NCBI RefSeq assembly: GCF_947568905.1
Contig: NC_079165.1
Span: forward strand, 83,700,001-83,764,000
DNA: 64,000 nt
Reading direction: 5' to 3'
Source of the DNA: Ostrea edulis
Lineage: Eukaryota
In this document: piece by piece, positions 1 to 64,000 of the stretch
Position numbering within the stretch: position 1 is the stretch's first letter
Layout: every line of letters starts with the position of its first letter
Program-made: the position numbers and the translations under genes
The notes under the pieces: model-generated
Told to the model about the DNA's origin: nothing
What the model saw: the letters and a program-made list of their open reading frames with translations, nothing else
Database searches by the model: none

Positions 1-64
1 TTTAACAGACTTACCCCCCTTTTATTTCCTGTAATAGCTACACCTCTCACCAGATTAATCACTT
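1..64. other. Empty (uninserted) TTAA target site of the 9.3-kb element
   Basis: 1-54 matches the left flank of the element (about 12565-12625: CCCCCTTTTATTTCCTGTAATAGCTACA.CTCTCA..CAGA). It is followed by a single TTAA (55-58) and then directly by the right-flank sequence TCACTTGTATT seen at 21884. Confidence 0.85.
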
Positions 65-143
65 GTATTCGTTCAGAAGATGACATTGTTTAATGATTGA
101 CCAATGCAGTTTTTTTTTGTATTTAGATGCATTGTTTGTTGAA

Positions 144-4800: not shown

Positions 4801-5009
4801 GAAAAGTTCAATTTGATGTACATTTCGTCTTCAAAGTCGGATGTTTCTCAATTAGATGTATACAGGGGATGATTACTCCTCCTAGGCACCTGATCCCACC
4901 TCTGGTGTGTCCAGGGGTCCGTTTTTGCCCAACTATCTATTTTGTATTGTTTGTAGGAGTTATGAGATTGATCACTGTTCGTTATCTTCACCTTTCATGA
5001 TAAAGATGA

Positions 5010-11760: not shown

Positions 11761-13691
11761 CTTAGTATGCCATTAACATTTATGATCAATAAAAAATCTT
11801 AGAAACAAATCTGGAAGACTCTGCGGTGTCTTTTATTTCGAGTTCACTGGGATGTATGTTCTTCTATTTAATTATGAAATCAGTATTTGTAGGATATCAG
11901 TGGTTCATAATGTCACTGTACAATTGATTTTGAAGGCAGAAACTGGAGTGCGCTCACTCTAGGAAATGTTGAGTTTGCGAAAAAGACCACACGAGAAAGG
12001 GCGAAACCACCAGGATGAAGCCAAATATATGATTTATATAGGAAATGAATACTTTTCCGGGGTTGGAATATTCTTATTCATTGACCAATTTCATTGCATT
12101 GAAGGTGAAAATATCGAACATTGATCAATCTCATAACTCCTATATAAGGAATACAAAATAAAGATTTGGGCATCAGGTGTCTAGGAGGAGTAATGATCCC
12201 CCATCGGGTCCAACTCTCAATTTTGTATTCCTTATAGGATTTATGAAATTGAGATTTCATAAAATTGAGTACGTTATCTTCACATTTTCATATCACCAAA
12301 TCTTCTAGAAATGCTTTGGTACACCGGCACATAAAAGCAGACCAGACTTCAACTCTATTCTGGAGAAAAATTTAATCGAGTTTTCATAGGGAAAATCTCT
12401 AACTACTTGTTTCAAAATATTTCCATCAATGATTTAACATTTTAAAGGCCCTGAAAACACAGACAACTAATGCAAAAAAAATAATCTGGCATGACATCCT
12501 GTTGAGCGATGTATGAATAATTAGTAAAAATTCATGAAAGCAAGTATACTATATATAGTTTGTCTTTACCACAGTTATCCCCCTTTTATTTCCTGTAATA
12601 GCTACATCTCTCATAATTCACAAGATTAAAGCTGACATGAATTAATAAATACGTACACCTTTCTCATCTTATCCGCCATATTTCTCTCAGGTAGCCCAAT
12701 TTACTCTACCCGTGAGTGATTTTTCTAGGTGGATTCGACCAGTGCACATCTCCGATAGTAATATATAGGGAATGAGAAACAAATAAAATCACATTTTAAA
12801 ACATTATGCTTTGCTCAAAATTACAAAATATTTATTGTATACCAATGCAACATTCTGGAAGTTTTGATAAGTTAGACAAAAATGCAAAAAAAAAACAACC
12901 AAAAAAACAACAACAAAAAAAAAAAAACCCGGTTTTCTTGCATACTTGCAAGTGCATGCAAGTATTTGCTGTTTCTTATATAATAAATGCGGATAAATCA
13001 TTTGCCAATTACATACTGATAGAATGGAATACACAAAGAGCATAAAATATATTATTTATATCAATTCTTGCAAAATAAAGGTGCATGCCATATGCATAAT
13101 ATGTAATGCGTAAGGTATATTCGCAAAAAAAGCCCCACCAAAAACCCGTATCAAATACGGCCGTCTATTCAACAGGTATCGGAGATGTGCACTTACCGAA
13201 AATATTATATTCTCTTTATTCCGATAAATCCACGAAACAAAATGATAAACTCCATTTGTATCTCGTTAGAACTTTACAACACGTTGTCATTCCATTATAC
13301 AGACTGCGACACACTTCACCCGTGCTTCAATCAGGGGAGATGTCAGAGTCGAAATTTTTTCCTGTATTGAATGCTTGTCTGGTCGAGGTTTTGCAGTTTG
13401 AATATAGAAATGGGGAATCTAATATCTGGTTGGATATATTGCGTGCACAATTCAAAATTTATCGATGATCATATACAAACTTGGATATACAAATAAGGGA
13501 ACAATGATCAAAAATATATATCTGTGTGAAAATGCGCGTATTACATTTGCAATCAACAATAAACAGTTGAATACACAAAGACACATCTAAAAGGAAATGT
13601 ATAAACGAAAATATAGTTTTGTTTTCTCTTTTGCAACCACATGATGAAATTATTTACGGTCTCTGTATGCCCATATTCATTGATTGAACAG

Positions 13692-13708
13692 GAGAGAGAG
13701 AGAGAGAC

Positions 13709-13757
<49 letters not shown>

Positions 13758-13773
13758 AGAGAGATGGAGAGAG
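13692..13773. repeat. (GA)n microsatellite
   Basis: Direct; length varies among units (35676-35772, 57943-58020). Confidence 0.95.
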
Positions 13774-13798
13774 ACCGTCCTACTTCGATGTACAATAT

Positions 13799-14099
13799 CA
13801 GTGGCGGATTTAAGGGGGTGCAGCCGGCGCCCCCCCCCCTTAAAAATTTCAAATTTAAGGTAAATCGTGGTATCTTCTTTAGAAAAATGTACTCAACGAT
13901 AAAAGAAGCAATAATTTCTTCCACTCCCTGAGAAATAAATGACAAAATCTTTTGATTTCTTGAATTACTTTATTGGGAGAACTTAATTTTTTCTAAAAAT
14001 CCTTAAAATTAGCGTCATTTTATTATTTTCACCTCAAGGCGGTTCGCAGACCCCCTGCCTCATAAAGTGGCGCCCCCCGTAACCACAATTCCTGGATCC
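13799..14099 (+). mobile_element. ~300-bp MITE-like element starting CAGTGGCGGAT, 3' TIR truncated
   Basis: Begins CAGTGGCGGATTTAAGGGGG; ends AATTCCTGGATCC without the GCCACTG that would complete the inverted end. Copies start at ~35799 and ~58046. Confidence 0.45.
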
Positions 14100-14462
14100 T
14101 TGAAAATATTATCGCATATCCACGCTTGTCTTGGATATGCGCATTTATCTCCGTAACTGTATCCTCGTCAGTTTTTACTAAAAGGGAAAGGGGGGGGGGA
14201 GAGTTCTTATTTATTCCGGGAAATTTAATTCTGCAATAGTCTAATATATATTGACACGTACACGTCACGTCCTTTCTGGAACATTCTTCCAAACGGCGTG
14301 GTCATCAATTTGGTGCAGCATCAATTCTATCCATATCACTTTAAAATATGCCCAAGACCAAATCAAAAAGGGGGGCACCCAGATCCACGACGTCGGACCA
14401 GTCTCAGCATGCTCAGGCAGTACACACAGGGCAATGCTGACCCCAGCGTAGCACATGGCGGA

Positions 14463-14525
14463 GTCCAGCCACAGATACCTGTCGTCCAGCCACAGATACC
14501 TGTCGTCCAGCCTCAGATACCTGTC
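14463..14525 (+). repeat. 3 x 21-bp coding repeat (VQPQIPV) in the gag N-terminus
   Basis: GTCCAGCC(A/T)CAGATACCTGTC x3. Confidence 0.9.
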
Positions 14526-14690
14526 CTCCATCCCAAAAACCACTTTTAACCCCCACAGCGGGTGCAGCCTGGGGTAGAATTAACGCCAAGTACAGGTAAT
14601 GATATTTTGCACAATGAATTTAATCAGGGCCTACAACCGTTACCTACAATGATCAATTCAAACCAGGCCCCATTGGCATATCATGTTATT

Positions 14691-15703
14691 ATGGAGCGCC
14701 AAATTAACATAAACTCAAATAATTGAAGATATCTTCAATTATTTGAAGATATCATCAATTAAATTATTGCTCACTTTAATTGAATTAATGCGCGCATTAA
14801 ATCAATTATTGCTCTAATCAAATGAATTAATGCGCGCTTCAATTCTATTATTGCTCACATCAATTGAATTAATGCGCGCATCAATTGAATTAATGAGAGC
14901 AATAATTGATTTAATGCGCGCATTAATTCAATTATTGCTCTCTTCAATTCAATTGATGCGCGCATTAATTCAATTAATGAGAGCAATAATAGATTTGATG
15001 CGCGCATTAATTCAATTATTGCTCTCTTCAATGCATTTGATGAGAGCATCAATTTAGTAGAAATATTGCTCGCAATAATTAATTTAGAGCTCGGTTTAAA
15101 TAATTTGATGATCTCTTTAATTCAATTGAAGATATCTTTAAATCATTTACAATGCTTTTGTATAAGGAATTAATGCGCGCATCAATTCTTTTAAAGAGAG
15201 CAACAATTCAATTAAAGATATCATTAATTCAATTGTGGATATGTTGAATTGAAGATATCTTTAATTATATAGTTGCTCTCTCTAAAAGAATTATTGCTCT
15301 CTTCAAATGAATTAAAGATATCATTAATTCAATTGAAGAGAGCAATAATTGAATTAATGCGCGCATCAATTCAATTATTGCTCTCATCAATTGATTTAAT
15401 GCGCGCATTATATCAATTATTGCTCTCTTCAATTGAATTGTAGCGCGCATCAATTCAATTGTTGATATCATTAATTCATTTGAAGAGATCATTAATTCAA
15501 TTGAAGCGCGCATCAATTCAGTTGAAGAATTAATGCTATCATCAATTTAATTAATGCGCGCAGTAATTCAGAATTGAAGATATCATTAATTATTTGAAGA
15601 GATCTTTAATTCAATTGTTGCGCGCATCAAATGAATTAATGATATCTTCAAATAATTGAAGATATCTTCAATTATTTGAGTTTATGTTAATTTGGCGCTC
15701 CAT
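14691..15703. mobile_element. Foldback/MITE element (1013 bp) inserted in gag, copy 1
   Basis: At least 65-bp perfect TIR (ATGGAGCGCCAAATTAACATAAACTCAAATAATTGAAG...); interior of ~21-bp palindromic subrepeats (TTAATGCGCGCATTAA); duplicated flank ATGTTAT (14683-14689 and 15704-15710). Confidence 0.9.
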
Positions 15704-16143
15704 ATGTTATAACCACACTAAACATAAAATAGTCAACGGTGAATTTGTTAATTTAGCCACTTTGCTTGTACGTGACAGCAGTAATTCTCAGATAGCATCT
15801 ATTCTCTCAGTCAACAAATTTGGCCAAATTATTGCATATCCTAAGCAATCAAACAAAATCACTACTATTGAACGCTGGACAGATGCGTTCCTCATATTTA
15901 CTAGCATATATATTGCTGGTCATCCAGAAAAAACACAGCAATTATTAAAGTACGTCCACGACGTTAGACTGGGGGCAGAAAAGTCACAGGGTTGGCCTAA
16001 TTATGACGAGCAGTTTCGCTTGCGCATGGCAACTAATCCGTCTATGGACTGGGGCAGGGTTGATGCAGAGCTTTGGCTCATTTACATGACCCCTTCAAAC
16101 ACCCCATCCCCCCAGCCACCATCAAATCAGTATCTCAAGTGCT

Positions 16144-17974
16144 TTGATTATAATTACAAGGGGTCGTGCCACAAGATTCAGTGTAGATATTTACACCGTT
16201 GCCTTAAGTGTGGCGACAACCATCCGTCAAGTGATTGTGCTAAAACCCAGGCTAAGGCGGGCAAACCAGGGGGACCAAGCAACAATCAGCCCTTTTGGGC
16301 CAATAGCAACCAGTCACAATCCTTTAGCCCAAGCCAAACCAGACAGCAGTCTGGATATATGGGCCCTGGCAAATTCGCCAATAAATACTAGCATAGTTGT
16401 TAGTTATCTCCACACATACCCAGACACTACATCAGCTATTTCTTTTTTTAAAAATGGTCTAATTCGGGGGTTTAGATTGCAGTATTCGGGTCCTCGACTG
16501 CCAATGTTTTGTAGTAATCTTGTATCAGCCACTGAGCACACAGAGGTGTTGCAAGAAAAAATCCATAAAGAGGTGCTTGAAGGACGAATGGCTGGTCCTT
16601 TTGACCACCCCCCATTGCATAATTTACACGTTTCCCCAATAGGTGTCGTTCCGAAGGCAGATGGCGGTTGGCGCATGATCACACATCTTTCTTACCCACC
16701 GTCAAATAGTATAAACCACCATATCGACCCGGTTCACAGATCTGTTAAGTATACCCCATTTGATACTGTAGTCCAAACCATTAGTCTTTTGGGCAAGGGG
16801 ACGTTCATTGCAAAAGTTGATATCAAAAGTGCGTTCAGGTTAATTCGGGTTCATCCAGCTGATTTCGAACTCTTGGGCTTGCATATGAATGGCAGTTTTT
16901 ATATTGATAAGTGTTTACCTTTTGGTTGCGCTATTTCATGCAAAATTTTTGAAATGTTCTCATCATTTTTAGAGTGGTTGGTCATAGCTAAATCAGGGAT
17001 TGAAACGGTTCACCATTACTTGGATGATTTTATTTTTGCAGGCAGTGCGCATACAAGCCATTGTCATGTCCTTATGCATACATTTCAGTCTATGTGTGTC
17101 GAGATGGGAATACCTTTGAACCAGGATAAATCTGTTCAACCCACTACCTGTTTAATATTTCTCGGTCTGGAGATTGATACTATCAAAATGCAAATTAGAA
17201 TACCCCGAGAAAAGGTTGACGAAGTCATGAATCTCCTACTCTTCTGGGTCTCGAAAAATAAAATTAAGTTATCTACCCTTCAGAGCCTGGTGGGCAAGTT
17301 AAATTTTTTTTGGCAAAGCAATACTCGGTAGCAGGGCATTCAACCGTAGATTTTACAACGCCACGATTGGTCCCACTAAGCCATCGCATCATATCAGAAT
17401 CAATCACTCAATGCGTGAAGACATGAATACATGGATAAGTTTTTTGAGGGGATTCAATGGTGTAGTGTATTTCCCAGAGAGGGAGTGGGCCACCCACAAC
17501 ACTTTACAACTGTTCACGGACAGTGCAGGTGGATCTAGTTTAGGTTGCGGGTGTTATTTTCAGGGTCAGTGGACCTACCTTCAATGGCCACATGATTGGA
17601 CCATTACTTCAATCTTGAAAGACATCACATTTTTAGAACTTGTGCCCATTGTGCTAGCCATATCAGTATGGGGCAGTAGGTTGCAAAACAAAAAGATACT
17701 ATTTCATGTGGACAATATGGCCTTAGTACACATTCTTAACAAACAGTCATCTAAGTCACATCGGGTTATGTCGTTTGTTAGGCCACTTATCCTTCAAACA
17801 TTGCACTTCAATATTCAGTTCAAAGCCCAGCATATCCCTGGGAAAACAAATAAAATTGCTGATTCTATATCTCGCAAGCAGTGGGACTTGTTCAGGAACC
17901 TGGCACCTACAGCCGATCACAACCCTCAGCTAATCCCAGCTTCGTTCCAGAGGCTGCTTTGTCAAGTGAAATAA
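16144..17974 (+). pseudogene. pol: Reverse transcriptase / RNase H ORF, split by a +1 frameshift at a T8 run (~17304-17311)
   Basis: VSPIGVVPK, KVDIKSAFR, LPFG, HYLDDF (RT); LFTDSAG, DITFLELVPI, FHVDN, NKIADSISR (RNase H). Removing one T gives the continuous reading KLNFFGKAILGSRAFNRRF...MREDM. Confidence 0.92.
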
Positions 17975-18842
17975 GCCGCCTTTTACACTCATCCTTGTCA
18001 GCAAACACCAACCAAGCATATATGGTGGGTATTCAGGCATTCAACCATTTCCGTAGCATTCAGGGACTACCTAACACATGGCCACCACCGGATGCTCACA
18101 TCAATACATTTATTGCACATTTATCCATACACGGTTACAAGCAATCCACAGCTAAAGCATACATCTCTGCCATTAGTTTTTATTGCAAACTCCACTGGAA
18201 TGCGGATCCGACTAAGCATTTTATAGTGCAGAAATTGTTGCAGGGTATGAAGCGCACAAATTCAATATCGGATGCCCGTTTACCTATCACATTGGGCATT
18301 TTGGAACTAATCATAAATAAACTACAGGTGGTATGCTCTAGCATGTATGAGACCCTTCTTTTTAAAGCATCATTCTCACTAGCTTTTAATGCCTTGCTTA
18401 GGATAGGGGAATTTGCTTTGTCAAAGGGCAATTCTGTGGATCGGGTTTTACATACTGGGGACATTTCCCTGCACACTAACTATTTAACAATTCACATTAG
18501 ATATTCGAAAACTGACCAATTAGGTAGGGCACCACATTGACAGTACATAAGATGACCGGAACTACTTGTCCAATACAGGCCATGCACGATTATATGGAGG
18601 TTAGGGCACCGAAAGCGGGGCCATTATTTTGTCATTACTCTGGTCAGCCTCTTACTCGTTACCAGTTTACCTCAGTTCTGTCACGCTCGCTTAATTTAGC
18701 GGGGATAGACAGTAGGCACTTCAAATCCCACTCGTTTCGCATTGGTGCAGCAACTACACTCGCTCAACAAGGCATGTCAGCCGAAGTTATTCAAGCGGCA
18801 GGTCGATGGAGATCTGTTGCATATCAGTCATATATTCGCTAA
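17881..18842 (+). pseudogene. Tyrosine recombinase, split by a 1-nt deletion near 18526-18540
   Basis: Catalytic motifs LLRIGE, RYSKTDQ, SHSFRIGAAT, AGRWRS and YQSYIR are all present. Adding one G to AGGGC gives DQLGRGTTLTVHK, joining the 17881 and 18537 ORFs. Confidence 0.92.
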
Positions 18843-18857
18843 TCTCTTAACGTTCAT

Positions 18858-19487
18858 ATGCCTTGGGTATTTGCATGCCTAACATTCACCAAGTTCTTCA
18901 TAGGTCCAATTAAAGTGTGGATTGTTGGATCCTCCATTATTAAGAGGGCAGCAGTGGCTGCCAGATCCAGGACAGGGGGACCAAACCTTAACGTTCCAAA
19001 CACGACCATTTGGTGGCAAGGTTACGGGGGTATGAATTTATACGAGTTGGTGCCGAAACTTAAAATATTACAGCAGGTGCAAGATATTCCTGATCTTATC
19101 ATTGTTCATTGTGGGGCAAACAACCTTGGCCGTACCAACCTGTGGTCACTGGTCAGACTTCTTCAGTCTGCTATACTAGAAATAACCAAACGTTTTCCTA
19201 GTGTGAAATTAGTGTGGTCCTCACTGCTACCTAGATTTAGTTGGCGTTATTCTACACAGATACAGGCAATGGAAAACGCCAGAGCAAGAATTAACAGGGA
19301 GGGTATTAGGCTAATAGCTTCAAAGGGTGGGGCGTTCATCAAACACACACAATTTGAAGCTAAGCCCGTTCATCTGTATCATTCTGATGGTGTGCATCTG
19401 TCACAGCTCGGGAATGACTTATTTCTCAATAATCTACAAGGTACCCTTGAAACCTTCATTGGTGGCAGGGTTAATGCGTTTCCTTAG
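18858..19487 (+). CDS. SGNH/GDSL-type hydrolase (209 aa), intact
   Basis: Block I VWIVGSS, block II QGYGG, block III VHCGANN, block V DGVHLS. The true start may be spliced (acceptor at 18903). Confidence 0.85.
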   Translation: MPWVFACLTFTKFFIGPIKVWIVGSSIIKRAAVAARSRTGGPNLNVPNTTIWWQGYGGMNLYELVPKLKILQQVQDIPDLIIVHCGANNLGRTNLWSLVRLLQSAILEITKRFPSVKLVWSSLLPRFSWRYSTQIQAMENARARINREGIRLIASKGGAFIKHTQFEAKPVHLYHSDGVHLSQLGNDLFLNNLQGTLETFIGGRVNAFP

Positions 19488-20362
19488 ACCTGTTTCGATT
19501 TGCGGCAATCTGGTTAGCGGTGACCATTTGAATTGGCGTACTGCCGCCGTCACCACGGTTCTGGGCACTCCCTTTGTGGCGGTTGCAGTCCCACAAACGC
19601 TCCTGTTTCACGGGCGTGTGTGGCACGTGCAAGTGGCGTTTCGGCGCACCCCAACTCAAATGGAGGAGTGCACCCAATATTCTGCAGCTTCATGCCATGA
19701 ACTTGAAAATTTGCAGTATTGATTGATGATTGAATTGATGATTGAATGATGGAATTGTTGACATTGAATTGTCGGACTATTGATTGATTGATTTAATATC
19801 TTAATTCTTGTATTATTGATTGATTTATTGTATTTGCATTTGGTGACGTTGTGCACTTGCGTTTACCCAGTGCGCAATTCGCCCATCTGGGGCCGTCACA
19901 TTTGATTGATTGATTGATTGTTGAGGGGGCGGCTCTGTGGTAGCCCCCAACCATCACCGCGGCCAAGAGCGCCAAAACAAATAAATACCGTTCATTATTA
20001 TAGTGGTTGTACAGTGTTATTTTTGGACAGGAATCGGTGATAAAAAATATATATACTCATGCTCATCATTATACATACATGTAATCACCTTGTACCTTAT
20101 TGGAGAAGGCTTATATAGGCTGCAAGCCTGCTGCCTAATCCATTTATGCTTCATACATATTATTTGCATTACAAAATAACAAAAAAGAATATTGTTATTA
20201 AAGGTGGGGGAAAGACACTCTTGTCCCCTCCCCTTGATTCTATGTGTTTGATAACGACGCATAATATGATAAACTCGATTATTACATTTGCATTAGTACA
20301 ATTTGCATCGAGTTCAACGCAGAATGTAATAACGCAAAATGGCATAGATATATATAAGATCT

Positions 20363-20560
20363 ATTGAGCGCCAAATTAGCATAAAATGAAGTAATCGAAA
20401 ATAACATTATTAAAAGATATGCTTAATTTTTAATTATTGTGTGTTTTAAATGAATCAAACAAATCTGTATTATCAATTGATGAGAGCAATATTGAGTTAC
20501 TAGTACTGTTCTCTTTTAATGAATTAACGATATCATTTGTCTTAATAAGAGCGCGATTAT
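20363..20560. mobile_element. Degraded one-ended remnant of the same foldback family
   Basis: ATTGAGCGCCAAATTAGCATAAA resembles the TIR; TCAATTGATGAGAGCAATA resembles the subrepeat. Also present at ~42413-42610. Confidence 0.55.
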
Positions 20561-20568
20561 TACAAGGT

Positions 20569-20572
<4 letters not shown>

Positions 20573-20613
<41 letters not shown>
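20573..20613. repeat. (CT)n microsatellite
   Basis: Direct; copy at 42623-42672. Confidence 0.95.
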
Positions 20614-20616
<3 letters not shown>

Positions 20617-20815
20617 CCATACACTCGTACAGTGTTGTATATGCAAATTATATATGCATAAACAATTTCTGTACCTAAATGATTTCCTGATTTATAAATC
20701 TGCAATACTCTGACCAGTAAATCATATGGTATAAGGATTCATGCACAATACAGGGTAAATATTCTACTCTGATACTTCCCCTGATTGAAGATAGCTGATC
20801 GGCACGGGCTAAGTG

Positions 20816-21136
20816 CAAGGTGAAGATAACGAACAGTGATCAATCTCATAATTCCTACAAGCAATACAAAATAGATAGTTGGGCAAACACGGACCCCTGG
20901 ACACACCAGAGGTGGGATCAGGTGCCTAGGAGGAGTAAGCATCCCCTGTTGACCGGTCAAACCCGCCGTGAGCACCATATCCCGATCAGGTAAACGGAGT
21001 TAGCCGCAGTCAAATTCAGTGTGCCAAGAACGGCTTAACAATCAGTATGAAACACGTCAGACAGCATTTGACCCAATGCGAGGTTGTATTGACGAACTAG
21101 ATCGTTATAACGACCATAGAATTTGCGAAATGCTGA
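20816..21136 (-). mobile_element. 321-bp Penelope-like 3' fragment with 7-bp TSD, inside the right arm of the TTAA element
   Basis: CTAAGTG at 20809-20815 and 21137-21143; copy at 42878-43198. Confidence 0.85.
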
Positions 21137-24100
21137 CTAAGTGTGTCGCAGGCTGTACAATGGTATTTACTGTTGGAATGCAAATGGAGTTTATCGTTTT
21201 GTTTCATGGATTATGCAAATAACGGGAGTTTTACTACTACTTAGAGTATTTTCGACAAGTGTACACGTACATTTGCGGTCCTTTACAGATATTACGAGTA
21301 GACCCAGGTAAATAGTCGTCCGCATTCGATGCGTTTTCATGGCGAGCATACATGTCATGTTTATAAGTACAAAATTACTTATTTATTTGCCTTTTACTTG
21401 AAGTAATTGTGAATGGAATAGATTGTATACCCTTTGCTTATTCCATTGTATCAATAGATAATAGATGAAATATTTCTCCGCGTTTTTGTATAGTTTTGAC
21501 ATATTTACTGCAAATGTACCCACACTCACGTAAAGAAAAGGCATTCTATATATATTTATCCAAAGCTTTTAAAATGATTTACTATTGTACGATATGTTTA
21601 TTATAATTTTGAGCACTGCGTGGTGTTCCAAAACGTGATTTCATTTCTTCTTGATGTCCTGTAAATTAGTATCGGAAATGTACGTGTTACCTGTCGAAGC
21701 TATCCGTACAGGTAAATCGAAGACACTGATGTGAAGTGAAGCGTAGCAAAACTCGTCCCCTTATATACCATGCGAACCCTGATACATATAACAATAGAAT
21801 ATCCAACTAATATGGCGGATTAGCAGAGAAATATGTCGGACATATAAAATTATACTATATTTATTAATTCATGTCAGCTTTAATCACTTGTATTTGTTCA
21901 GAAGATGACATTGTTTAATGATTGACCAATGTAGTTTTTTGTATTTAGATGCATTGTTTGTTGAAAGGTGAAGATAACGAACAGTGATCAATCTCATAAC
22001 TCCTATAAACGATATAAAATAGATAGTCGGGCAAACACGGACCCCTGGACACACCAGAGGTAGGAAAAGGCGCCTACGAGGAGTAAGCATCCCCTGTTGA
22101 CTGGTCACACCCACCTTGATTCCTATCGTTATAACGACCATAGCATTTGCGAAAAGCTGATTTTTAACGAGACTGTTGAATCCCCTGTACCATCAACTTG
22201 TTTGTCAGTAGCTTGTCTCGATTTAAAAACTGACCATACGCAGAACAATCCCTTGCGCATCGAATCAGTTGAGAGATATAAACACCATATGCAGGTGATC
22301 ATGAATATTGCTACATAAATATGGTAAGTTGACGATGGAGAAGCTACAAGCATCCCGTTTGTTATAAAGTTGAGTTGTTAGTTTGCCGTTAATATCTACT
22401 TTCAATAAGATATGTATCAATGTATCTTAGCTTTCGGGTTTCGATAAATCAGCATGCACAGTCGACAATTCAATATTTAGTGTCTTTTGGAAATGTACTT
22501 TATTACAAAATCTAACATTCATACAGACATCAGCGATTTTTTTTCTCGCGTTTTCCTATATATTTGACTTTATATCCACAGAGTGGATCCGACACTACTA
22601 GGTAACGTGTAATATTGGTTTGAAAAACTACCATAATGCCCTATCCTTTTTAGCTGTCACAATGGTTACCGGTTCTTTTACAAAGTCTTCTAAATGAAGT
22701 GCAATATATCAATTGAAACGAGTTTTTATACATTGAGGAATACAACATCATTATATTATAATAACTGTACAAAAAGGAAAACATTTGAAAATGCGAAAAT
22801 AAGAGTTTCAATCATTTGGTCAAAGTTTCGGGATGTGGATAAATCTTCGTCGTTTCCAGTCCTACAAAACAAAACATCACAGATAATAACGACAAAACAA
22901 AACATCACAGATAATAACGACAAAAACATGTTTAATAATCTATGTTTGACACTTTATCTGCGAAGTCATCTTCGCAAGCCTAGTGTCTGATTCGCTTTCC
23001 CTCATCTCCCCTGAGAGTAAGCGAATCGGACACTTGGCTTGTGAAGTTCCTGCATAGCATGCACTGAACATCTAATAAAACTTGAATCATTCCTTTTTAT
23101 TCCTATCATTTTTGATTTACAAAAAACTATTGATGATACATAGCGTTTATAATGCAATTTCATCATACTTTTATTTTGGACTTGGCATTCGTCTACTGAT
23201 CACGATTCTCGTCCTTTGAAGTCCCAGGCGTCATTTCTGTTTTGTTCGTGAAATACTATGACTACAAATAGACAGAGTAATTGGAATTTCATATAAAGAT
23301 GTCTCCTCCATGTATGTTCTGCAAGGCAATCTCAAATATATCGTGTATAATGAACCCAAGAGTTCGAATTGTCTTCTAGAAAACAGGAAACATTTTCCTA
23401 GTCAGGGAATAGAATGAGCACAAAATAAAGATAAAGTGATCATTCATAGGTGGGATCAGGTGCCTAGGAGGAGGAAGTATCCCCTATCGACCAGTTACAC
23501 CCGCCGTAAGCCCTATATGTTTATCAGGTAAAAAGAGTTATTCGTAGCCAAATCAGTGTGCCAAGAACGGCCTTACAATCGGTATGAAACACGTCAGACA
23601 GCATTTAACTCAACGACCGTAGAATCTGCGAAATACTGACTTTAAACGAGACTGCTAAAAACCTTACAACATTTTCGGAGGAACGTTTTATTACAGAGTA
23701 TAAGTTGATTCGTAATCGAATCATTGCACGAGAAGGAAGTGTATCCTCTGGATTACTGATATATAGGCTTATAGGGGTATAGTAGATTTATTGCAGTTAT
23801 TTAAATTAAGCTAACCGAGACCATGGACGTTGGATGTTGTGATTATTGGGAATTCCACTTCAAATATCAAGTGTACTGTAGAATTTTAACCTGAACAATC
23901 GAAACATACAACTTCATTTTTATGGAATAAGTGGGTGAATGATCAGACTGAAAAGGGGAAGAAAACGAACAGTGATCCATCTCATAACTCCTATAAAAAT
24001 ACAAAATTAACAGTAGGGCCATCATGGACCCTTGGATATACCAGAGGTGGAATCAGGTGCCTATGTGTAGTATACATCCTCTACCGACTGGTCACACCCA

Positions 24101-54690: not shown

Positions 54691-54840
54691 NNNNNNNNNN
54701 NNNNNNNNNNNNNNNNNNNNNNNNNNNNNNNNNNNNNNNNNNNNNNNNNNNNNNNNNNNNNNNNNNNNNNNNNNNNNNNNNNNNNNNNNNNNNNNNNNNN
54801 NNNNNNNNNNNNNNNNNNNNNNNNNNNNNNNNNNNNNNNN
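54691..54840. other. Assembly gap (150 N)
   Basis: N run at the position of the (AT)n tracts in the other units. Confidence 1.
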
Positions 54841-57800
54841 GAGAAGAGTGATCAATCTCTTAACTCCCACAAAGAACAGACGTCTCCATATGAGAGAAAA
54901 TTCTCAATATGAACGTTAAACAATATACAACCAACCAACTTACAAGGAATACAAAAGGAAGAGTTGGGAAACACGGATCTTTGGATGTACCAGAGATGGG
55001 ATCAGGTGCCTAGGAGGAGTAAGCAGTCTCTGTCAACCAGTCAGACCCGCAATGGGCCTTAATACTTTATCGGGTAAACGCAGTATTCCCTAGTTAAAAT
55101 CAGTGTGGAAAGAACGGCCTAACAATTGACATGAAACACGTCAGGTTGCCCTACTCTTAAATTTGTATTCTTTATAGGTTATTTTTCGCTGTATGTCAGT
55201 AGATTAACATATTTATGACTATATACTATAGGTGTTAATTATGTTTTGATGGCAATTATATCTGGATTTAGCACAGGATGAAACTGTGATACAGTCTTCT
55301 GAAAGTTCACTGAAGGTGTGGGGAGGTGTCTGATAGAATGGCATAATTTCATCCCGTGTTCATCCATAGTACAGCAGAATTTACTTAACATTATTCTAAG
55401 CCAAAAAAGTTTGGAAATATCAAATTCTATCTTGTCAGTAAATAGGATGCATAGTGATTCATTGTTATGATGATGAATCGTTATGATTAAAAGGCGCAGA
55501 AAACGTAGTGACCAATATCATAACTCCTATAAAGAATACAAAATAAGTGTGGGACCAACATGGAACCCAGGACATACCTGAGGTGGGATCAGGTGCCTAG
55601 GAAATGTAAGCATCCACCGTCGACCGTGTAATACTACTTTTTGAACCTCGTTTAAGAAACACTTCAGACAGCTCTAGAACCAATGACAATTTTCAATGGC
55701 AAACTAGACCGTTGTAACGACTATAGAATTCGCTAAATGTTGATTTTAAATGAAACTGTTTAAACTCCTGTACCATCAACTTCTTTGTCAGTTGGCTGCC
55801 TCGATTTAGAAACTGGTTATACGCAGAACACGATCGTGTGTATCGAAACAGTCGAAGGACATAAAAACCATATGTAGGTGATTATGGAATATTGTGACAT
55901 AAATATGGGAAGTTGATGATAGAGAAATTTAACTCACCCCGATTGTCATATTGTTGAGTTCTTAGTATGCCATTAACATTTATGATCAATAAAAAAAATC
56001 TTAGAAACAAATCTGGAAGACTCTGCGGTGTCTTTTATTTCGAGTTCACTGGGATGTATGTTCTTCTATTTAATTATGAAATAAGTATTTGTAGGATATC
56101 AGTGGTTCATAATGTCACTGTACAATTGATTTTGAAGGCAGAAACTGGAGTGCGCTCACTCTAGGAAATGTTGAGTTTGCGAAAAAGACCACACGAGAAA
56201 GGGCGAAACCACCAGGATGAAGCCAAATATATGATTTATATAGGAAATGAATACTTTTCCAGGGTTGGAATATTCTTATTCATTGACCAATTTCATTGCA
56301 TTGAAGGTGAAAATATCGAACATTGATCAATCTCATAACTCCTATATAAGGAATACAAAATAAAGATTTGGGCATCAGGTGTCTAGGAGGAGTAATGATC
56401 CCCCATCGGGTCCAACTCTCAATTTTGTATTCCTTATAGGATTTATGAAATTGAGATTTCATAAAATTGAGTACGTTATCTTCACATTTTCATATCACCA
56501 AATCTTCTAGAAATGCTTTGGTACACCGGCACATAAAAGCAGACCAGACTTCAACTCTATTCTGGAGAAAAATTTAATCGAGTTTTCATAGGGAAAATCT
56601 CTAACTACTTGTTTCAAAATATTTCCATCAATGATTTAACATTTTAAAGGCCCTGAAAACACAGACAACTAATGCAAAAAAAAAATCTGACATGACATCC
56701 TGTTGAGCGATGTATGAATAATTAGTAAAAATTCATGAAAGCAAGTATACTACATGTAGTTTGTCTTTACCACAGTTATCCCCCTTTTATTTCCTGTAAT
56801 AGCTACATCTCTCATAATTCACAAGATTAAAGCTGACATGAATTAATAAATACGTACACCTTTCTCATCTTATCCGCCATATTTCTCTCAGGTAGCCCAA
56901 TTTACTCTACCCGTATATACCCCAAATGTGATTCTCACACCTGAGTGATTTTTCTAGGTGGATTCGACCAGTGCACATCTCCGATAGTAATATATAGGGA
57001 ATGAGAAACAAATAAAATCACATTTTAAAACATTATGCTTTGCTCAAAATTACAAAATATTTATTGTATACCAATGCAACATTCTGGAAGTTTTGATAAG
57101 TTAGACAAAAATGTAAAAAAAAAAAAAAAAAAAAAACAAAAAAAAAAACAAACCAAAAACCCCGGTTTTCTTGCATACTTGCAAGTGCATGCAAGTATTT
57201 GCTGTTTCTTATATAATAAATGCGGATAAATCATTTGCCAATTACATACTGATAGAATGGAATACACAAAGAGCATAAACTATATTATTTATATCAATTC
57301 TTGCAAAATAAAGGTGCATGCCATATGCATAATATGTAATGCGTAAGGTATATTCGCAAAAAAAAACCCCACCAAAAACCCGTATCAAATACGGCTGTCT
57401 ATTCAACAGGTATCGGAGATGTGCACTTACCGAAAATATTATATTCTCTTTATTCCGATAAATCCACGAAACAAAATGATAAACTCCATTTGTATCTCGT
57501 TAGAACTTTACAACACGTTGTCATTCCATTATACAGACTGCGACACACTTCACCCGTGCCAAACAGGGTGTCTTCAATCAGGGGAGATGTCAGAGTCGAA
57601 ATTTTTTCCTGTATTGAATGCTTGTCTGGTCGAGGTTTTGCAGTTTGAATATAGAAATGGGGAATCTAATATCTGGTTGGATATATTGCGTGCACAATTC
57701 AAAATTTATCGATGATCATATACAAACTTGGATATACAAATGAGGGAACAATGATCAAAAATATATATCTGTGTGAAAATGCGTGTATTACATTTGCAAT

Positions 57801-57941
57801 CAACAATAAACAGTTGAATACACAAAGACACATCTAAAAGGAAATGTATAAACGAAAATATAGTTTTGTTTTCTCTTTTGGAACCACATGATAAAATTAT
57901 TTACGGTACGGTCTCTGTATGCCCATATTCATTGATTGAAC

Positions 57942-57995
<54 letters not shown>

Positions 57996-58598
57996 AGAGA
58001 AAAGAGAGAGATGGAGAGAGACCGTCCTACTTCGATGTACAATATCAGTGGCGGATTTAAGGGGGTGCAGCCGGCGCCCCTCCCCCCCCCCCTAAAAATT
58101 TCAAATTTAAGGTAAATCGTGGTATCTTCTTTAGAAAAATGTACTCAACGATAAAAGAAGCAATAATTTCTTCCACTCCTTGAGAAATAAATGACAAAAT
58201 CTTTTGATTTCTTGAATTACTTTATTGGGAGAACTTAATTTTTTCTAAAAATCCTTAAAATTAGCGTCATTTTATTATTTTCACCTCAAGGCGGTTCGCA
58301 GACCCCCTGCCTCATAAAGTGGCGCCCCCCGTAACCACAATTCCTGGATCCTTGAAAATATTATCGCATATCCACGCTTGTCTTGGATATGCGCATTTAT
58401 CTCCGTAACTGTATCCTCGTCAGTTTTTACTAAAAGGGAAAGGGGGGGGGGGGTTTCTTATTTATTCCGGGAAATTTAATTCTGCAATAGTCTAATATAT
58501 ATTGACACGTACACGTCACGTCCTTTCTGGAACATTCTTCCAAACGCCGTGGTCATCAATTTGGTGCAGCATCAATTCTATCCATATCACTTTAAAAT

Positions 58599-60623
58599 AT
58601 GCCCAAGACCAAATCAAAAAGGGGGGCACCCAGATCCACGACGTCGGACCAGTCTCAGCATGCTCAGGCAGTACAGACAGGGCGTAATCGCAGGACACGG
58701 AGGAGCAATGCTGACCCCAGCGTAGCACATGGCGGAGTCCAGCCACAGATACCTGTCGTCCAGCCTCAGATACCTGTCGTCCAGCCTCAGATACCTGTCC
58801 TCCATCCCAAAAACCACTTTTAATCCCCACAGCGGGTGCAGCCTGGGGTAGAATTAACGCCAAGTACAGGTAATGATATTTTGCACAATGAATTTAATCA
58901 GGGCCTACAACCGTTACCTACAATGATCAATTCAAACCAGGCCCCATTGGCATATCATGTTATTATGGAGCGCCAAATTAACATAAACTCAAATAATTGA
59001 AGATATCTTCAATTATTTGAAGATATCATCAATTAAATTATTGCTCTCTTTAATTGAATTAATGCGCGTATTAAATCAATTATTGCTCTAATCAAATGAA
59101 TTAATGCGCGCTTCAATTCTATTATTGCTCACATCAATTGAATTAATGCTCGCATCAATTGAATTAATGAGAGCAATAATTGATTTAATGCGCGCATTAA
59201 TTCAATTATTGCTCTCTTCAATGCATTTGATGAGAGCATCAATTTAGTAGAAATATTGCTCGCAATAATTAATTTAGAGCTCGGTTTAAATAATTTGATG
59301 ATCTCTTTAATTCAATTGAAGATATCTTTAAATCATTTACAATGCTTTTGTATAAGGAATTAATGCGCACATCAATTCTTTTAAAGAGAGCAACAATTCA
59401 ATTAAAGAGATCATTAATTCAATTGTGGATATGTTGAATTGAAGATATCTTTAATTATATAGTTGCTCTCTCTAAAAGAATTATTGCTCTCTTCAAATGA
59501 ATTAAAGATATCATTAATTCAATTGAAGAGAGCAATAATTGAATTAATGCGCGCATTAAATCAATTATTGCTCTCATCAAATGAATTAATGCGCGCATCA
59601 ATTCAATTATTGCTCTCATCAATTGATTTAATGCGCGCATTATATCAATTATTGCTCTCTTCAATTGAATTGTAGCACGCATCAATTCAATTGTTGATAT
59701 CATTAATTCATTTGAAGAGATCATTAATTCAATTGAAGCGCGCATCAATTCAGTTGAAGAATTAATGCTATCATCAATTTAATTAATGCGCGCAGTAATT
59801 CAGAATTGAAGATATCATTAATTATTTGAAGAGATCTTTAATTCAATTGTTGCGTGCATCAAATGAATTAATGATATCTTCAAATAATTGAAGATATCTT
59901 CAATTATTTGAGTTTATGTTAATTTGGCGCTCCATATGTTATAACCACACTAAACATAAAATAGTCAACGGTGAATTTGTTAATTTAGCCACGTTGCTTG
60001 TACGTGACAGCAGTAATTCTCAGATAGCATCTATTCTCTCAGTCAACAAATTTGGCCAAATTATTGCATATCCTAAGCAATCAAACAAAATCACTACTAT
60101 TGAACGCTGGACAGATGCGTTCCTCATATTTACTAGCATATATATTGCTGCTCATCCAGAAAAAACACAGCAATTATTAAAGTACGTCCACGACGTTAGA
60201 CTGGGGGCAGAAAAGTCACAGGGTTGGCCTAATTATGACGAGCAGTTTCGCTTGCGCATGGCAACTAATCCGTCTATGGACTGGGGCAGGGTTGATGCAG
60301 AGCTTTGGCTCATTTACATGACCCCTTCAAACACCCCATCCCCCCAACCACCATCAAATCAGTATCTCAAGTGCTTTGATTATAATTACAAGGGGTCGTG
60401 CCACAAGATTCAGTGTAGATATTTACACCGTTGCCTTAAGTGTGGCGACAACCATCCGTCAAGTGATTGTGCTAAAACCCAGGCTAAGGCGGGCAAACCA
60501 GGGGGACCAAGCAACAATCAGCCCTTTTGGGCCAATAGCAACCAGTCACAATCCTTTAGCCCAAGCCAAACCAGACAGCAATCTGGATATATGGGCCCTG
60601 GCAAATTCGCCAATAAATACTAG
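58599..60623 (+). pseudogene. gag: Gag-like ORF1, copy 3 (TAA at 58821, foldback insertion)
   Basis: ORF pieces 58599-58823 and 59916-60623. Confidence 0.85.
58965..59935. mobile_element. Foldback element, copy 3 (971 bp)
   Basis: Same TIR and flanks; net -42 bp relative to copy 1. Confidence 0.9.
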
Positions 60624-62205
60624 CATAGTTGTTAGTTATCTCCACACATACCCAGACACTACATCAGCTATTTCTTTTTAAAAAATGGTCTAATTCGGGG
60701 GTTTAGATTGCAGTATTCGGGTCCTCGACTGCCAATGTTTTGTAGTAATCTTGTATCAGCCACTGAGCACACAGAGGTGTTGCAAGAAAAAATCCATAAA
60801 GAGGTGCTTGAAGGACGAATGGCTGGTCCTTTTGACCACCCCCCATTGCATAATTTACACGTTTCCCCAATAGGTGTCGTTCCGAAGGCAGATGGCGGTT
60901 GGCGCATGATCACACATCTTTCTTACCCACCGTCAAATAGTATAAACCACCATATCGACCCGGTTCACAGATCTGTTAAGTATACCTCATTTGATACTGT
61001 AGTCCAAACCATTAGTCTTCTGGGCAAGGGGACGTTCATTGCAAAAGTTGATATCAAAAGTGCGTTCAGGTTAATTCGGGTTCATCCAGCTGATTTCGAA
61101 CTCTTGGGCTTGCATATGAATGGCAGTTTTTATATTGATAAGTGTTTACCTTTTGGTTGCGCTATTTCATGCAAAATTTTTGAAATGTTCTCATCATTTT
61201 TAGAGTGGTTGGTCATAGCTAAATCAGGGATTGAAACGGTTCACCATTACTTGGATGATTTTATTTTTGCAGGCAGTGCGCATACAAGCCATTGTCATGT
61301 CCTTATGCATACATTTCAGTCTATGTGTGTCGAGATGGGAATACCTTTGAACCAGGATAAATCTGTTCAACCCACTACCTGTTTAATATTTCTCGGTCTG
61401 GAGATTGATACTATCAAAATGCAAATTAGAATACCCCGAGAAAAGGTTGACGAAGTCATGAATCTCCTACTCTTCTGGGTCTCGAAAAATAAAATTAAGT
61501 TATCTACCCTTCAGAGCCTGGTGGGCAAGTTAAATTTTTTTTGGCAAAGCAATACTCGGTAGCAGGGCATTCAACCGTAGATTTTACAACGCCACGATTG
61601 GTCCCACTAAGCCATCGCATCATATCAGAATCAATCACTCAATGCGTGAAGACATGAATACATGGATAAGTTTTTTGAGGGGATTCAATGGTGTAGTGTA
61701 TTTCCCAGAGAGGGAGTGGGCCACCCACAACACTTTACAACTGTTCACGGACAGTGCAGGTGGATCTAGTTTAGGTTGCGGGTGTTATTTTCAGGGTCAG
61801 TGGACCTACCTTCAATGGCCACATGATTGGACCATTACTTCAATCTTGAAAGACATCACATTTTTAGAACTTGTGCCCATTGTGCTAGCCATATCAGTAT
61901 GGGGCAGTAGGTTGCAAAACAAAAAGATACTATTTCATGTGGACAATATGGCCTTAGTACACATTCTTAACAAACAGTCATCTAAGTCACATCGGGTTAT
62001 GTCGTTTGTTAGGCCACTTATCCTTCAAACATTGCACTTCAATATTCAGTTCAAAGCCCAGCATATCCCTGGGAAAACAAATAAAATTGCTGATTCTATA
62101 TCTCGCAAGCAGTGGGACTTGTTCAGGAACCTAGCACCTACAGCCGATCACAACCCTCAGCTAATCCCAGCTTCGTTCCAGAGGCTGCTTTGTCAAGTGA
62201 AATAA
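60376..62205 (+). pseudogene. pol: RT/RNase H, copy 3 (two frameshifts)
   Basis: Breaks at the T5A6 tract (~60675-60685) and at the T8 run (~61535-61542). Confidence 0.9.
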
Positions 62206-63073
62206 GCCGCCTTTTACACTCATCCTTGTCAGCAAACACCAACCAAGCATATATGGTGGGTATTCAGGCATTCAACCATTTCCGTAGCATTCAGGGACTA
62301 CCTAACACAAGCCCACCACTGGATGCTCACATCAATACATTTATTGCACATTTATCCATACACGGTTACAAGCAATCCACAGCTAAAGCATACATCTCTG
62401 CCATTAGTTTTTATTGCAAACTCCACTGGAATGCGGATCCGACTAAGCATTTTATAGTGCAGAAATTGTTGCAGGGTATGAAGCGCACAAATTCAATATC
62501 GGATGCCCGTTTACCTATCACATTGGGCATTTTGGAACTAATCATAAATAAACTACAGGTGGTATGCTCTAGCATGTATGAGACCCTTCTTTTTAAAGCA
62601 TCATTCTCACTAGCTTTTAATGCCTTGCTTAGGATAGGGGAATTTGCTTTGTCAAAGGGCAATTCTGTGGATCGGGTTTTACATACTGGGGACATTTCCC
62701 TGCACACTAACTATTTAACAATTCACATTAGATATTCGAAAACTGACCAATTAGGTAGGGCACCACATTGACAGTACATAAGATGACCGGAACTACTTGT
62801 CCAATACAGGCCATGCACGATTATATGGAGGTTAGGGCACCGAAAGCGGGGCCATTATTTTGTCATTACTCTGGTCAGCCTCTTACTCGTTACCAGTTTA
62901 CCTCAGTTTTGTCACGCTCGCTTAATTTAGCGGGGATAGACAGTAGGCACTTCAAATCCCACTCGTTTCGCATTGGTGCAGCAACTACACTCGCTCAACA
63001 AGGCATGTCAGCCGAAGTTATTCAAGCGGCAGGTCGATGGAGATCTGTTGCATATCAGTCATATATTCGCTAA
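62112..63073 (+). pseudogene. Tyrosine recombinase, copy 3 (shared frameshift)
   Basis: ORFs 62112-62771 and 62768-63073. Confidence 0.9.
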
Positions 63074-63088
63074 TCTCTTAACGTTCAT

Positions 63089-63718: not shown

Positions 63719-64000
63719 ACCTGTTTCGATTTGCGGCAATCTGGTTAGCGGTGACCATTTGAGTTGGCGTACTGCCGCCGTCACCACGGTTCTGGGCACT
63801 CCCTTTGTGGCGGTTGCAGTCCCACAAACGCTTCTGTTTCACGGGCGTGTGTGGCACGTGCAAGTGGCGTTTCGGCGCACCCCAACTCAAATGGAGGAGT
63901 GCACCCAATATTCTGCAGCTTCATGCCATGAACTTGAAAATTTGCAGTATTGATTAATGATTGAATTGCTGATTGAATGATGGAATTGTTGACATTGAAT

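What the first reader, a model, noticed from the sequence alone, without database searches (positions are those of the whole stretch)
12626..21883. 9.3-kb TTAA/AG...CT DNA transposon carrying a whole YR retrotransposon (three-level nest)
Seen: perfect 22-bp TIRs, TTAA on both sides, and an empty site at 55-58. Inside lies a Ngaro-like gag-RT/RH-YR-SGNH element, itself interrupted by a foldback element. Established: a TTAA TSD with 5'-RR termini characterises Kolobok. Inference: a large non-autonomous Kolobok-like vehicle with intact ends could move retroelement and hydrolase cargo in trans. This is the best candidate for an undescribed system in the window.
Basis: partly seen in the sequence, partly recalled or inferred. 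Interest (0 to 1): 0.85.

Follow-up and report, generated by a model that had tools for sequence, protein, structure and literature searches.

The report
Nested transposons in a tandem duplication
A 9.3-kb cut-and-paste DNA transposon shell in a bivalve genome has a broken Ngaro retrotransposon and two smaller repeats inserted in it, and its three copies arose when a 22-kb block was duplicated; this is ordinary transposon nesting, not a new cargo-moving system.

Summary
There are perfect 22-bp terminal inverted repeats (AG...CT), TTAA on both sides, and a paralogous empty site with one TTAA at 55-58. Inside lie ORF1, RT, RNase H, a tyrosine recombinase (YR) and an SGNH hydrolase, in that order, plus a 1-kb foldback element.

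- **One insertion, not three.** The five TIR hits in the window are the ends of three copies. These copies are units of a ~22-kb tandem duplication, so they record a single insertion event.
- **The shell.** It is a ~2.3-kb non-autonomous element with ~1.1-kb diverged inverted arms and no transposase.
- **The Ngaro is not whole.** ORF1, RT/RH and YR are all broken, and it lacks the split direct repeats that its relatives carry.
- **The foldback is a true insertion.** A public contig shows its empty site. A fourth nested element, SINE-like, sits in the right arm.
- **Superfamily.** Kolobok fits (TTAA, 5'-AG) but is unproven. One insertion at a palindromic TTAA cannot separate a TA, TWA or TTAA duplication, and no partner transposase or dispersed copy could be found.
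- **Movement with cargo.** Nothing shows the composite ever transposed as a unit.

Verdict: ordinary nested transposons in a repeat-rich bivalve region; low interest.

The parts
55..58 (.). Unoccupied paralogous target site with a single TTAA, at the junction of two A units of the array
   Evidence: Alignments of both flanks. Positions 55-1056 match 21880-22899 and 43942-44960 at ~91%.
12626..12629 (.). Left TTAA, read as a target-site duplication copy
12630..12651 (+). Left 22-bp terminal inverted repeat, starting 5'-AG
   Evidence: exact match, none expected by chance.
12630..13774 (+). Left arm of the DNA-transposon shell, ending in a (GA)n tract at 13692-13774. No protein-family match.
   Evidence: Collinear inverted homology to the right arm. 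Local alignment score 62 against 14.8 +/- 1.5 in 200 shuffles, ~72% identity over ~750 nt. Pfam blank.
13775..14347 (+). Probable 5' non-coding part of the Ngaro element; its exact 5' end is not determined
   Evidence: Relatives L003 and L005 start 505-560 bp upstream of ORF1. The ORF1 ATG is at 14348.
14348..14689 (+). N-terminal part of Ngaro ORF1; the frame is broken. Contains a 21-bp x 3.2 tandem repeat at 14463-14530.
   Evidence: L001 shows that ORF1 runs continuously through this region in another copy.
14690..15703 (.). Foldback element built of 21/42/84-bp repeats, inserted in ORF1. It is flanked by ATGTTAT at 14683-14689 and 15704-15710.
   Evidence: Folds as one hairpin, -328 kcal/mol. 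Contig L001 lacks it.
15711..16391 (+). C-terminal part of ORF1 (Cys/His-rich, gag-like by position)
   Evidence: 47% identical to ORF1 of relative L003. Saccostrea homologues at 57%. No Pfam family.
16456..17310 (+). Reverse transcriptase domain
   Evidence: RVT_1, E 2e-15. 65% identical to L003 RT residues 5-289.
17306..17971 (+). RNase H part of pol, in a different frame from RT (frame break near 17304-17310)
18109..18839 (+). Tyrosine recombinase, split by a frame change near 18525-18528
   Evidence: Phage_int_SAM_1 and Phage_integrase. tblastn in two frames.
18858..19487 (+). SGNH/GDSL hydrolase ORF, the only intact ORF. The GSS, G, GxN and DGxH blocks are conserved.
   Evidence: Lipase_GDSL_2. 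Alignment with bivalve homologues.
19488..20361 (+). Ngaro 3' non-coding part. Homology to a related family reaches 20044; the end lies between 20044 and about 20361. No B1-A2-B2 repeats.
   Evidence: L007 aligns to 17969-20044. No direct repeats above chance.
20362..20572 (.). Fragment related to the foldback element (one terminus plus 21-bp repeats); origin unresolved
   Evidence: (D11).
20573..21879 (-). Right arm of the shell, beginning (from inside) with (CT)n at 20573-20613, which mirrors the left arm's (GA)n
20816..21136 (.). SINE-like dispersed repeat inserted in the right arm, flanked by CTAAGTG at 20809-20815 and 21137-21143. It is absent from the left arm.
   Evidence: 56 fragments of this family in the window. 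A 74% match in Saccostrea cucullata locus L005.
21858..21879 (-). Right 22-bp terminal inverted repeat, ending CT-3'
21880..21883 (.). Right TTAA
34569..43941 (+). Second copy of the whole composite, in tandem-duplicated unit 2
   Evidence: 99.0-99.9% substitution identity to copy 1, with the same nested elements and the same frame breaks.
56831..64000 (+). Third copy, cut by the end of the window

Best explanation
This is a stack of ordinary transposon insertions that was later copied by tandem duplication. A non-autonomous cut-and-paste DNA transposon inserted once at a TTAA in a SINE-rich, tandemly repeated non-coding unit (A, 12.6 kb). That transposon is about 2.3 kb without its passengers, has ~1.1-kb diverged inverted arms and perfect 22-bp AG...CT termini, and probably belongs to Kolobok. 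A Ngaro-type tyrosine-recombinase retrotransposon (ORF1, RT/RH, YR, SGNH hydrolase) landed in its centre next to a (GA)n tract. A 1-kb foldback element then hit Ngaro ORF1 (7-bp duplication ATGTTAT), and a 321-bp SINE-like element hit the right arm (7-bp duplication CTAAGTG). The whole A+B block (~22 kb) was afterwards duplicated in tandem at least twice, giving the three copies in the window. Shown: the ends, the empty site, the arm homology, the domain order, both nested insertions, and the duplication. Inferred: the superfamily, the order in which the shell and the Ngaro arrived, and how the Ngaro lost its terminal repeats (truncation, or recombination between its B repeats). The composite is now inert on its own: it has no transposase and broken ORF1, pol and YR. 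Only the SGNH ORF is open.
For: TIRs, TTAA and the empty site. Tandem array: the self-comparison gives units starting at 55, 21880 and 43942. Substitution identity between units rises smoothly from 93% to 99.8% with no step at the element's ends, and the three B copies are 99.0-99.9% identical. All copies share the same nested elements and the same frame breaks. Arm homology is far above shuffles and is interrupted only by the SINE-like insert. Ngaro identity: Pfam domains; only ~140 bp between RH and YR, which leaves no room for a methyltransferase domain; relatives L003 and L005 have the classical A1...B1-A2-B2 split direct repeats and no inverted repeats; this architecture, including the SGNH ORF, is published (PMC9210276). 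The foldback's empty site is in contig L001. L001 and L002 carry different lesions from each other, so the Ngaro family has several copies. Published TE surveys report both Kolobok and Ngaro in bivalve genomes (PMC10294476, PMC9587614).
Against: Only one independent insertion of the shell is available, so its family, its true duplication length and its copy number are untested. The Ngaro ends are bracketed, not pinned: 5' between 13775 and 14348, 3' between 20044 and 20361. YR elements make no target duplication, so the Ngaro's status as an insertion rests on the arm symmetry and on its relatives' autonomy. The foldback-like fragment at 20362-20572 is not explained. B copies are slightly more alike than most of A, which needs gene conversion or a recent unequal crossover to explain.
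Confidence: 0.8

Rival explanations
1. The shell arrived at this TTAA already carrying the Ngaro, and perhaps the other passengers. In that case a 8-9-kb composite was mobilised in trans by a TTAA-specific transposase.
For: The TIRs and TTAA are intact in all visible ends. Full-length Kolobok elements of 7-14 kb with intact TTAA are reported in Xenopus (PMC6004289, read), so size alone does not forbid it. Nothing in the window fixes the order of the shell's and the Ngaro's arrival.
Against: No second locus is known. All three copies share more than 10 kb of homologous flanks. The TIR was not found in public metagenome contigs. Nesting after arrival explains the data equally well and needs no unusual event.
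Confidence: 0.15
2. The shell belongs to a superfamily other than Kolobok. TTAA is a palindrome that extends the inverted repeat, so the true duplication could be TA (Tc1/mariner-pogo type), TAA/TTA (PIF/Harbinger type) or TTAA (piggyBac or another TTAA-specific group).
For: Removing the element plus TA, TWA or TTAA gives the same empty-site string, as seen directly. There is no transposase in the element or the window.
Against: The 5'-AG...CT-3' termini fit Kolobok's RR...YY rule and not piggyBac's. All full-length Xenopus Kolobok elements start with AG, and one subfamily's TIR (AGCGATTCTGACATGG) shares AGC and TGACATG with this one (PMC6004289; a resemblance, not a test). Within molluscs, Kolobok is found almost only in bivalves, where it is widespread (PMC10294476, PMC9587614).
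Confidence: 0.3
3. The inverted arms are the inverted terminal repeats of the YR retroelement itself (DIRS1-like), and TTAA is the recombinase's crossover core, present on both sides after integration.
For: DIRS1-like elements have inverted terminal repeats. Site-specific recombination would leave the core on both sides. This copy has no split direct repeats.
Against: The arms are only ~72% identical, whereas repeats regenerated at each retrotransposition should be near-identical. No internal complementary region exists: the terminal 22-mer has no internal match even with 3 mismatches. There is no methyltransferase domain. Relatives at 65% protein identity have split direct repeats and no inverted repeats. 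Homology to a related Ngaro family is detectable only as far as 20044, well short of the right arm.
Confidence: 0.03
4. The A-B-A-B array is a giant KolobokP-like multimer, with B playing the TIR-bounded terminal direct repeat and A the internal region, and the A-A junction at 55 left by excision of B.
For: KolobokP multimers (LTDR-INT)n-LTDR and INT-INT junctions are described in bivalves (PMC9587614). The layout is formally similar.
Against: KolobokP repeats are ~450 or ~660 bp and its internal region of a few kb encodes a transposase and a His-Me nuclease. Here B is 9.3 kb, and A is 12.6 kb of SINE fragments and a minisatellite with no protein-family match. The TIR is absent from the published KolobokP consensus termini.
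Confidence: 0.02

Closest known systems
Non-autonomous Kolobok DNA transposons (e.g. Xenopus T2-MITE / XKol families; bivalve Kolobok)
   Same: TTAA on both sides, termini 5'-AG...CT-3' (RR...YY), no transposase of its own, and a host group (bivalves) rich in Kolobok. The TIR shares AGC and TGACATG with the XKol-A1 TIR.
   Different: No partner transposase or other copy is known. The arms are unusually long (~1.1 kb) and diverged. The duplication length is not established from one palindromic site.
Ngaro-like YR retrotransposons with an SGNH hydrolase ORF (e.g. DIRS-53_XT of Xenopus; Ngaro families of oysters and mussels)
   Same: The order ORF1, RT/RH, YR, SGNH; no methyltransferase domain; relatives with A1...B1-A2-B2 split direct repeats.
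   Different: This copy has no split direct repeats, has frame breaks in ORF1, RT/RH and YR, and carries a foldback insertion.
KolobokP multimers in bivalves
   Same: TIR-bounded units recur in direct orientation in a tandem array, with one junction lacking the unit.
   Different: Sizes differ ten-fold, and the 'internal' unit here encodes no transposase or His-Me nuclease. The array is explained by plain segmental duplication.
Foldback / MITE-like elements
   Same: The 1-kb insert is an almost perfect hairpin of short tandem repeats, with terminal inverted repeats and a short target duplication.
   Different: Its family and superfamily are not identified. A 7-bp (possibly 8-bp) duplication does not assign it.

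Membership tests
Kolobok superfamily | TTAA at both ends and a single TTAA at the empty site | tested here: met
   the definition is from PMC9587614.
Kolobok superfamily | The duplication is 4 bp (TTAA), not TA or TWA | tested here: inconclusive
   There is only one independent insertion. TTAA is palindromic and continues the inverted repeat, so all three readings give the same empty site.
Kolobok superfamily | Termini 5'-RR ... YY-3' | tested here: met
   AG...CT at all five visible ends; the rule is from PMC9587614 and PMC6004289.
Kolobok superfamily | A DDD/E transposase with the C/DxxH signature, in the element or in an autonomous partner sharing its TIRs | not testable with these tools
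   No transposase in the element or the window. The host genome cannot be searched here. Metagenome scans gave only chance hits.
piggyBac superfamily | TTAA duplication together with piggyBac-type termini (CCC...GGG from my own knowledge; PMC9587614 says only that Kolobok's RR...YY termini set it apart from piggyBac) | tested here: not met
   The termini are AG...CT.
Ngaro-like YR retrotransposons | RT/RH followed by a tyrosine recombinase, with no methyltransferase domain between them | tested here: met
   RH ends at 17971 and YR starts at 18109.
Ngaro-like YR retrotransposons | Split direct repeats A1 ... B1-A2-B2 | tested here: not met
   None in this copy; scores are at shuffle level. They are present in relatives L003 and L005, so the family has them and this copy has lost them.
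Ngaro-like YR retrotransposons | An optional SGNH hydrolase ORF after YR | tested here: met
   described in PMC9210276.
DIRS1-like YR retrotransposons | Near-identical inverted terminal repeats plus an internal complementary region, and a methyltransferase domain | tested here: not met
   Arms ~72% identical. No internal copy of the termini. No room for a methyltransferase domain.
KolobokP | ~450- or ~660-bp terminal direct repeats with their own short TIRs, around an internal region encoding a transposase and a His-Me nuclease | tested here: not met
   Unit sizes are 9.3 and 12.6 kb. No protein-family hit in A. The TIR is not at any published consensus terminus.

The most novel reading that the evidence does not exclude
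The intact-ended shell is still recognised by a TTAA-specific (Kolobok) transposase elsewhere in this genome and has moved, or can move, as a 9-kb unit. That would carry a YR retroelement and its intact SGNH hydrolase ORF to new sites, making a DNA transposon the vehicle of a retrotransposon.
Probability: 0.08. Interest if true: 0.45.

Novelty: new member of a known kind. Interest (0 to 1): 0.2.

Why it matters
Its value is mainly for annotation. It documents an apparently undescribed non-autonomous TTAA/AG...CT DNA transposon family in a bivalve and a clean four-element nest that gives a relative order of events. It also shows that apparent multi-copy evidence can come from a 22-kb tandem duplication rather than from transposition. 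If dispersed composite copies were found, it would be a modest example of a DNA transposon ferrying a retroelement. That is of interest to transposon biologists but is not a new kind of system.

Tried and rejected
- **TIR in public metagenome contigs.** The 22-mer gave 0 hits. TTAA plus the first 14 bases gave 26 hits, all chance: identity beyond the seed is random and none matches the element by BLAST.
- **Same-species contigs reaching the Ngaro or shell ends.** The RT query found two short Logan contigs, L001 and L002, which are internal only. The ORF1 and SGNH queries found only relatives at 82% protein identity or less. Exact-protein look-ups of a left-arm ORF and a flank ORF found nothing.
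- **TIR in published KolobokP consensus sequences.** Only internal chance matches to 8-10-mers.
- **Split direct repeats, or any direct or inverted repeat, between the Ngaro 5' and 3' regions.** All at shuffle level. The short repeats D14 and D15 are chance.
- **Transposase remnants.** Pfam on ORFs of the arms and of unit A gave nothing. Only ORFs of 75 aa or more were scanned, so decayed remnants could be missed.
- **Rfam and tRNA scans.** Nothing found, so the SINE-like repeat has no recognisable tRNA head.
- **Hypotheses considered and rejected.** DIRS-like ITR, KolobokP multimer, and two solo elements bracketing ordinary DNA. The empty site rules out the last.


Full report
**Observation.** The 22-base sequence AGCTGACATGAATTAATAAATA lies at 12630-12651 on the + strand and at 21858-21879 on the - strand, without a mismatch. 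None is expected by chance in shuffled sequence. TTAA abuts both ends. The first 58 bases of the window align with the element's left flank, and bases 55-130 align with its right flank, sharing one TTAA at 55-58. So the 9,250-bp stretch is absent from a paralogous site, as expected for a cut-and-paste insertion. The inverted repeat is perfect for 22 bases only.

**Context.** The same 22-mer also occurs at 34569 (+), 43920 (-) and 56831 (+). A self-comparison shows that the window is a tandem array of a ~22-kb unit. Each unit is a 12.6-kb non-coding segment A followed by the 9.3-kb element B, with units beginning at 55, 21880 and 43942.
- Substitution-only identity between units climbs smoothly from 93% at the start of unit 1 to 99-99.8%, with no step at B's borders.
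- The B copies are 99.0-99.9% alike.
- All three carry the same nested inserts and the same frame breaks.

The three elements therefore record one insertion followed by segmental duplication. The empty site lies at the oldest-looking A-A junction. A itself consists of about 17 fragments of one SINE-like repeat per unit and a 21-bp minisatellite. It has no protein-family match.

**The shell.** Outside the coding core, the two sides of B are inverted copies of each other. Collinear matches run from 12630-12687/21879-21825 through 12977-13316/21492-21139 to 13325-13369/20790-20746. A (GA)n tract at 13692-13774 mirrors a (CT)n tract at 20573-20613. With the perfect TIRs, the microsatellites and the SINE-like insert removed, the local alignment score is 62 against 14.8 +/- 1.5 in 200 dinucleotide shuffles. 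Identity is about 72% over about 750 aligned bases. The shell is thus a foldback-like, non-autonomous DNA transposon of about 2.3 kb with ~1.1-kb diverged arms and conserved tips. It encodes nothing recognisable, and its arms occur nowhere else in the window.

**The retroelement.** Pfam finds RVT_1, a weak RNase H match, the integrase SAM-like domain, the Phage_integrase catalytic domain and a GDSL/SGNH hydrolase, in that order on the + strand.
- Homologues are bivalve proteins from Saccostrea, Pecten, Mytilus, Magallana and Ostrea, at 40-66% identity. The host is a bivalve mollusc, not human.
- Two relatives fetched with their flanks, L003 and L005 (Saccostrea cucullata), show the textbook Ngaro layout A1 ... 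B1-A2-B2 at 97-100% repeat identity, with no inverted repeats.
- Only ~140 bp separate RNase H from the recombinase, so there is no methyltransferase domain.
- An SGNH ORF after YR is a described Ngaro feature (PMC9210276).

This is a Ngaro-type element, but not a whole one. Against the intact proteins of L003, all three window copies change frame near 17304-17310 (between RT and RH) and near 18525-18528 (inside YR). ORF1 is broken upstream of, and by, the foldback. No split direct repeats exist: every comparison of the 5' and 3' regions scores at shuffle level. Only the SGNH ORF is open, with its Ser, Gly, Asn and His blocks conserved. The 5' end lies between 13775 and the ORF1 ATG at 14348; relatives start 505-560 bp upstream of ORF1. 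The 3' end lies between 20044, where homology to a 78%-identical family (L007) fades, and about 20361. Without the foldback and its duplicated target copy, the Ngaro is at most about 5.6 kb.

**Further nesting.** The foldback at 14690-15703 is built of 21/42/84-bp repeats, folds into a single hairpin (-328 kcal/mol), and is flanked by ATGTTAT on both sides. A Logan contig, L001, is ~99% identical and runs straight across the site without it. That proves the insertion.
- L001 shares the RT/RH frame break with the window copies.
- L002 does not, but is broken elsewhere. So this Ngaro family has several copies with separate histories.

A 321-bp SINE-like repeat at 20816-21136 is flanked by CTAAGTG and interrupts the right arm where the left arm is continuous. 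A foldback-like fragment at 20362-20572 remains unexplained.

**Superfamily.** Kolobok is defined by TTAA duplications and 5'-RR...YY-3' termini, in contrast to piggyBac (PMC9587614). All full-length Xenopus Kolobok elements begin with AG, and one TIR (AGCGATTCTGACATGG) resembles this one (PMC6004289). Within molluscs, Kolobok is found almost only in bivalves (PMC10294476). The element meets both end criteria. Two caveats remain.
- TTAA is a palindrome that simply continues the inverted repeat. Removing the element with TA, TWA or TTAA gives the same empty site, so one insertion cannot fix the duplication length.
- No transposase or second locus is available.

I rate Kolobok the most likely superfamily, at about 0.55-0.6, not established.

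**Did the composite move?** Nothing shows it. Within the window the TIR occurs only in the array. Scans of public metagenome contigs gave no hit for the 22-mer and only chance hits for TTAA plus 14 bases. Exact-protein look-ups for arm and flank ORFs found nothing. The host genome itself cannot be searched with these tools. Whether the Ngaro entered the shell before or after the shell reached this site is open. Nesting in place is the simpler reading.

**Rivals.**
- A DIRS-like reading, in which the arms are the retroelement's own inverted repeats and TTAA is a recombination core, fails on four counts: 72% arm identity, no internal complementary region, no methyltransferase domain, and relatives with split direct repeats.
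- A KolobokP-multimer reading fails on sizes and on the absence of a transposase or nuclease in A, and the TIR is not in the published consensus set.
- Two solo elements bracketing ordinary DNA is excluded by the empty site.

**Verdict.** It is nonetheless the ordinary outcome of transposons landing in transposons in a repeat-rich bivalve region, multiplied by tandem duplication. The shell is probably a new family of a known superfamily.

**Housekeeping.**
- The N run at 54691-54840 was left as it is.
- No contig looked human.
Broken frames were only located, by searching the pieces separately.

Noticed in passing
window 55-64000: The whole window is a tandem array of a ~22-kb unit (12.6-kb non-coding A plus 9.3-kb B), at least 2.9 units long. 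Identity between units rises from 93% at the start of unit 1 to more than 99% further on, suggesting an older array edge plus recent unequal crossover or gene conversion.
   Followed up: yes
window 6739-7500, 28485-29370, 50555-51588: A 21-bp minisatellite (consensus ACGATACGATAGGATTAGCAC) with about 37-43 copies at ~75% match, once per A unit. The largest ORFs in A lie inside it and are artefacts of the repeat.
   Followed up: partly
window 140-338, 1593-1821, 4862-4994, 5364-5504, 21962-22160 and about 50 more places: A SINE-like dispersed repeat of ~320 bp occurs as about 17 fragments per A unit on both strands. It has 73-81% matches in Saccostrea cucullata (L005 17775-18311) and in ENA contig L003 (9353-9457). 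It has no tRNA-like head and no Rfam match.
   Followed up: partly
window 20362-20572: A fragment carrying one terminus (TATTGAGCGCCAAATTAGC) and 21-bp repeats of the foldback family sits between the Ngaro 3' end and the (CT)n of the right arm. It is unclear whether it is a second, truncated foldback insertion or part of the original shell.
   Followed up: partly
window 14463-14530: Three tandem 21-bp units lie inside the N-terminal part of Ngaro ORF1. They encode a repeated heptapeptide (VQPQIPV in the frame that continues into ORF1).
   Followed up: no
window 47-54 versus 12612-12625: The empty site differs from the three filled sites by a 7-bp indel a few bases upstream of the TTAA. This is probably ordinary divergence of the older paralogue, but an excision footprint cannot be excluded.
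   Followed up: no
window 12713 versus 34652-34680 and 56914-56942: The left arm of copy 1 lacks a ~28-bp stretch present in copies 2 and 3, just inside the TIR.
   Followed up: no
L001 (Logan SRR25445057), L002 (Logan ERR13868507): Two public read-set assemblies hold ~99%-identical Ngaro copies with lesions that differ from each other and, in part, from the window's copies. L001 has no foldback. L002 reads through the RT/RH junction in one frame but is broken near the position matching window 16608. The family is therefore multi-copy and was recently active.
   Followed up: partly
L004 7123-8206 and 13442-13831 (Pecten maximus): The Pecten relative is bracketed by arrays of a 41-bp tandem repeat on both sides of its ORFs, so its terminal direct repeats appear to be built of minisatellite units.
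   Followed up: no
window 54691-54840: A run of 150 N (assembly gap or mask) inside A of unit 3; left untouched.
   Followed up: no
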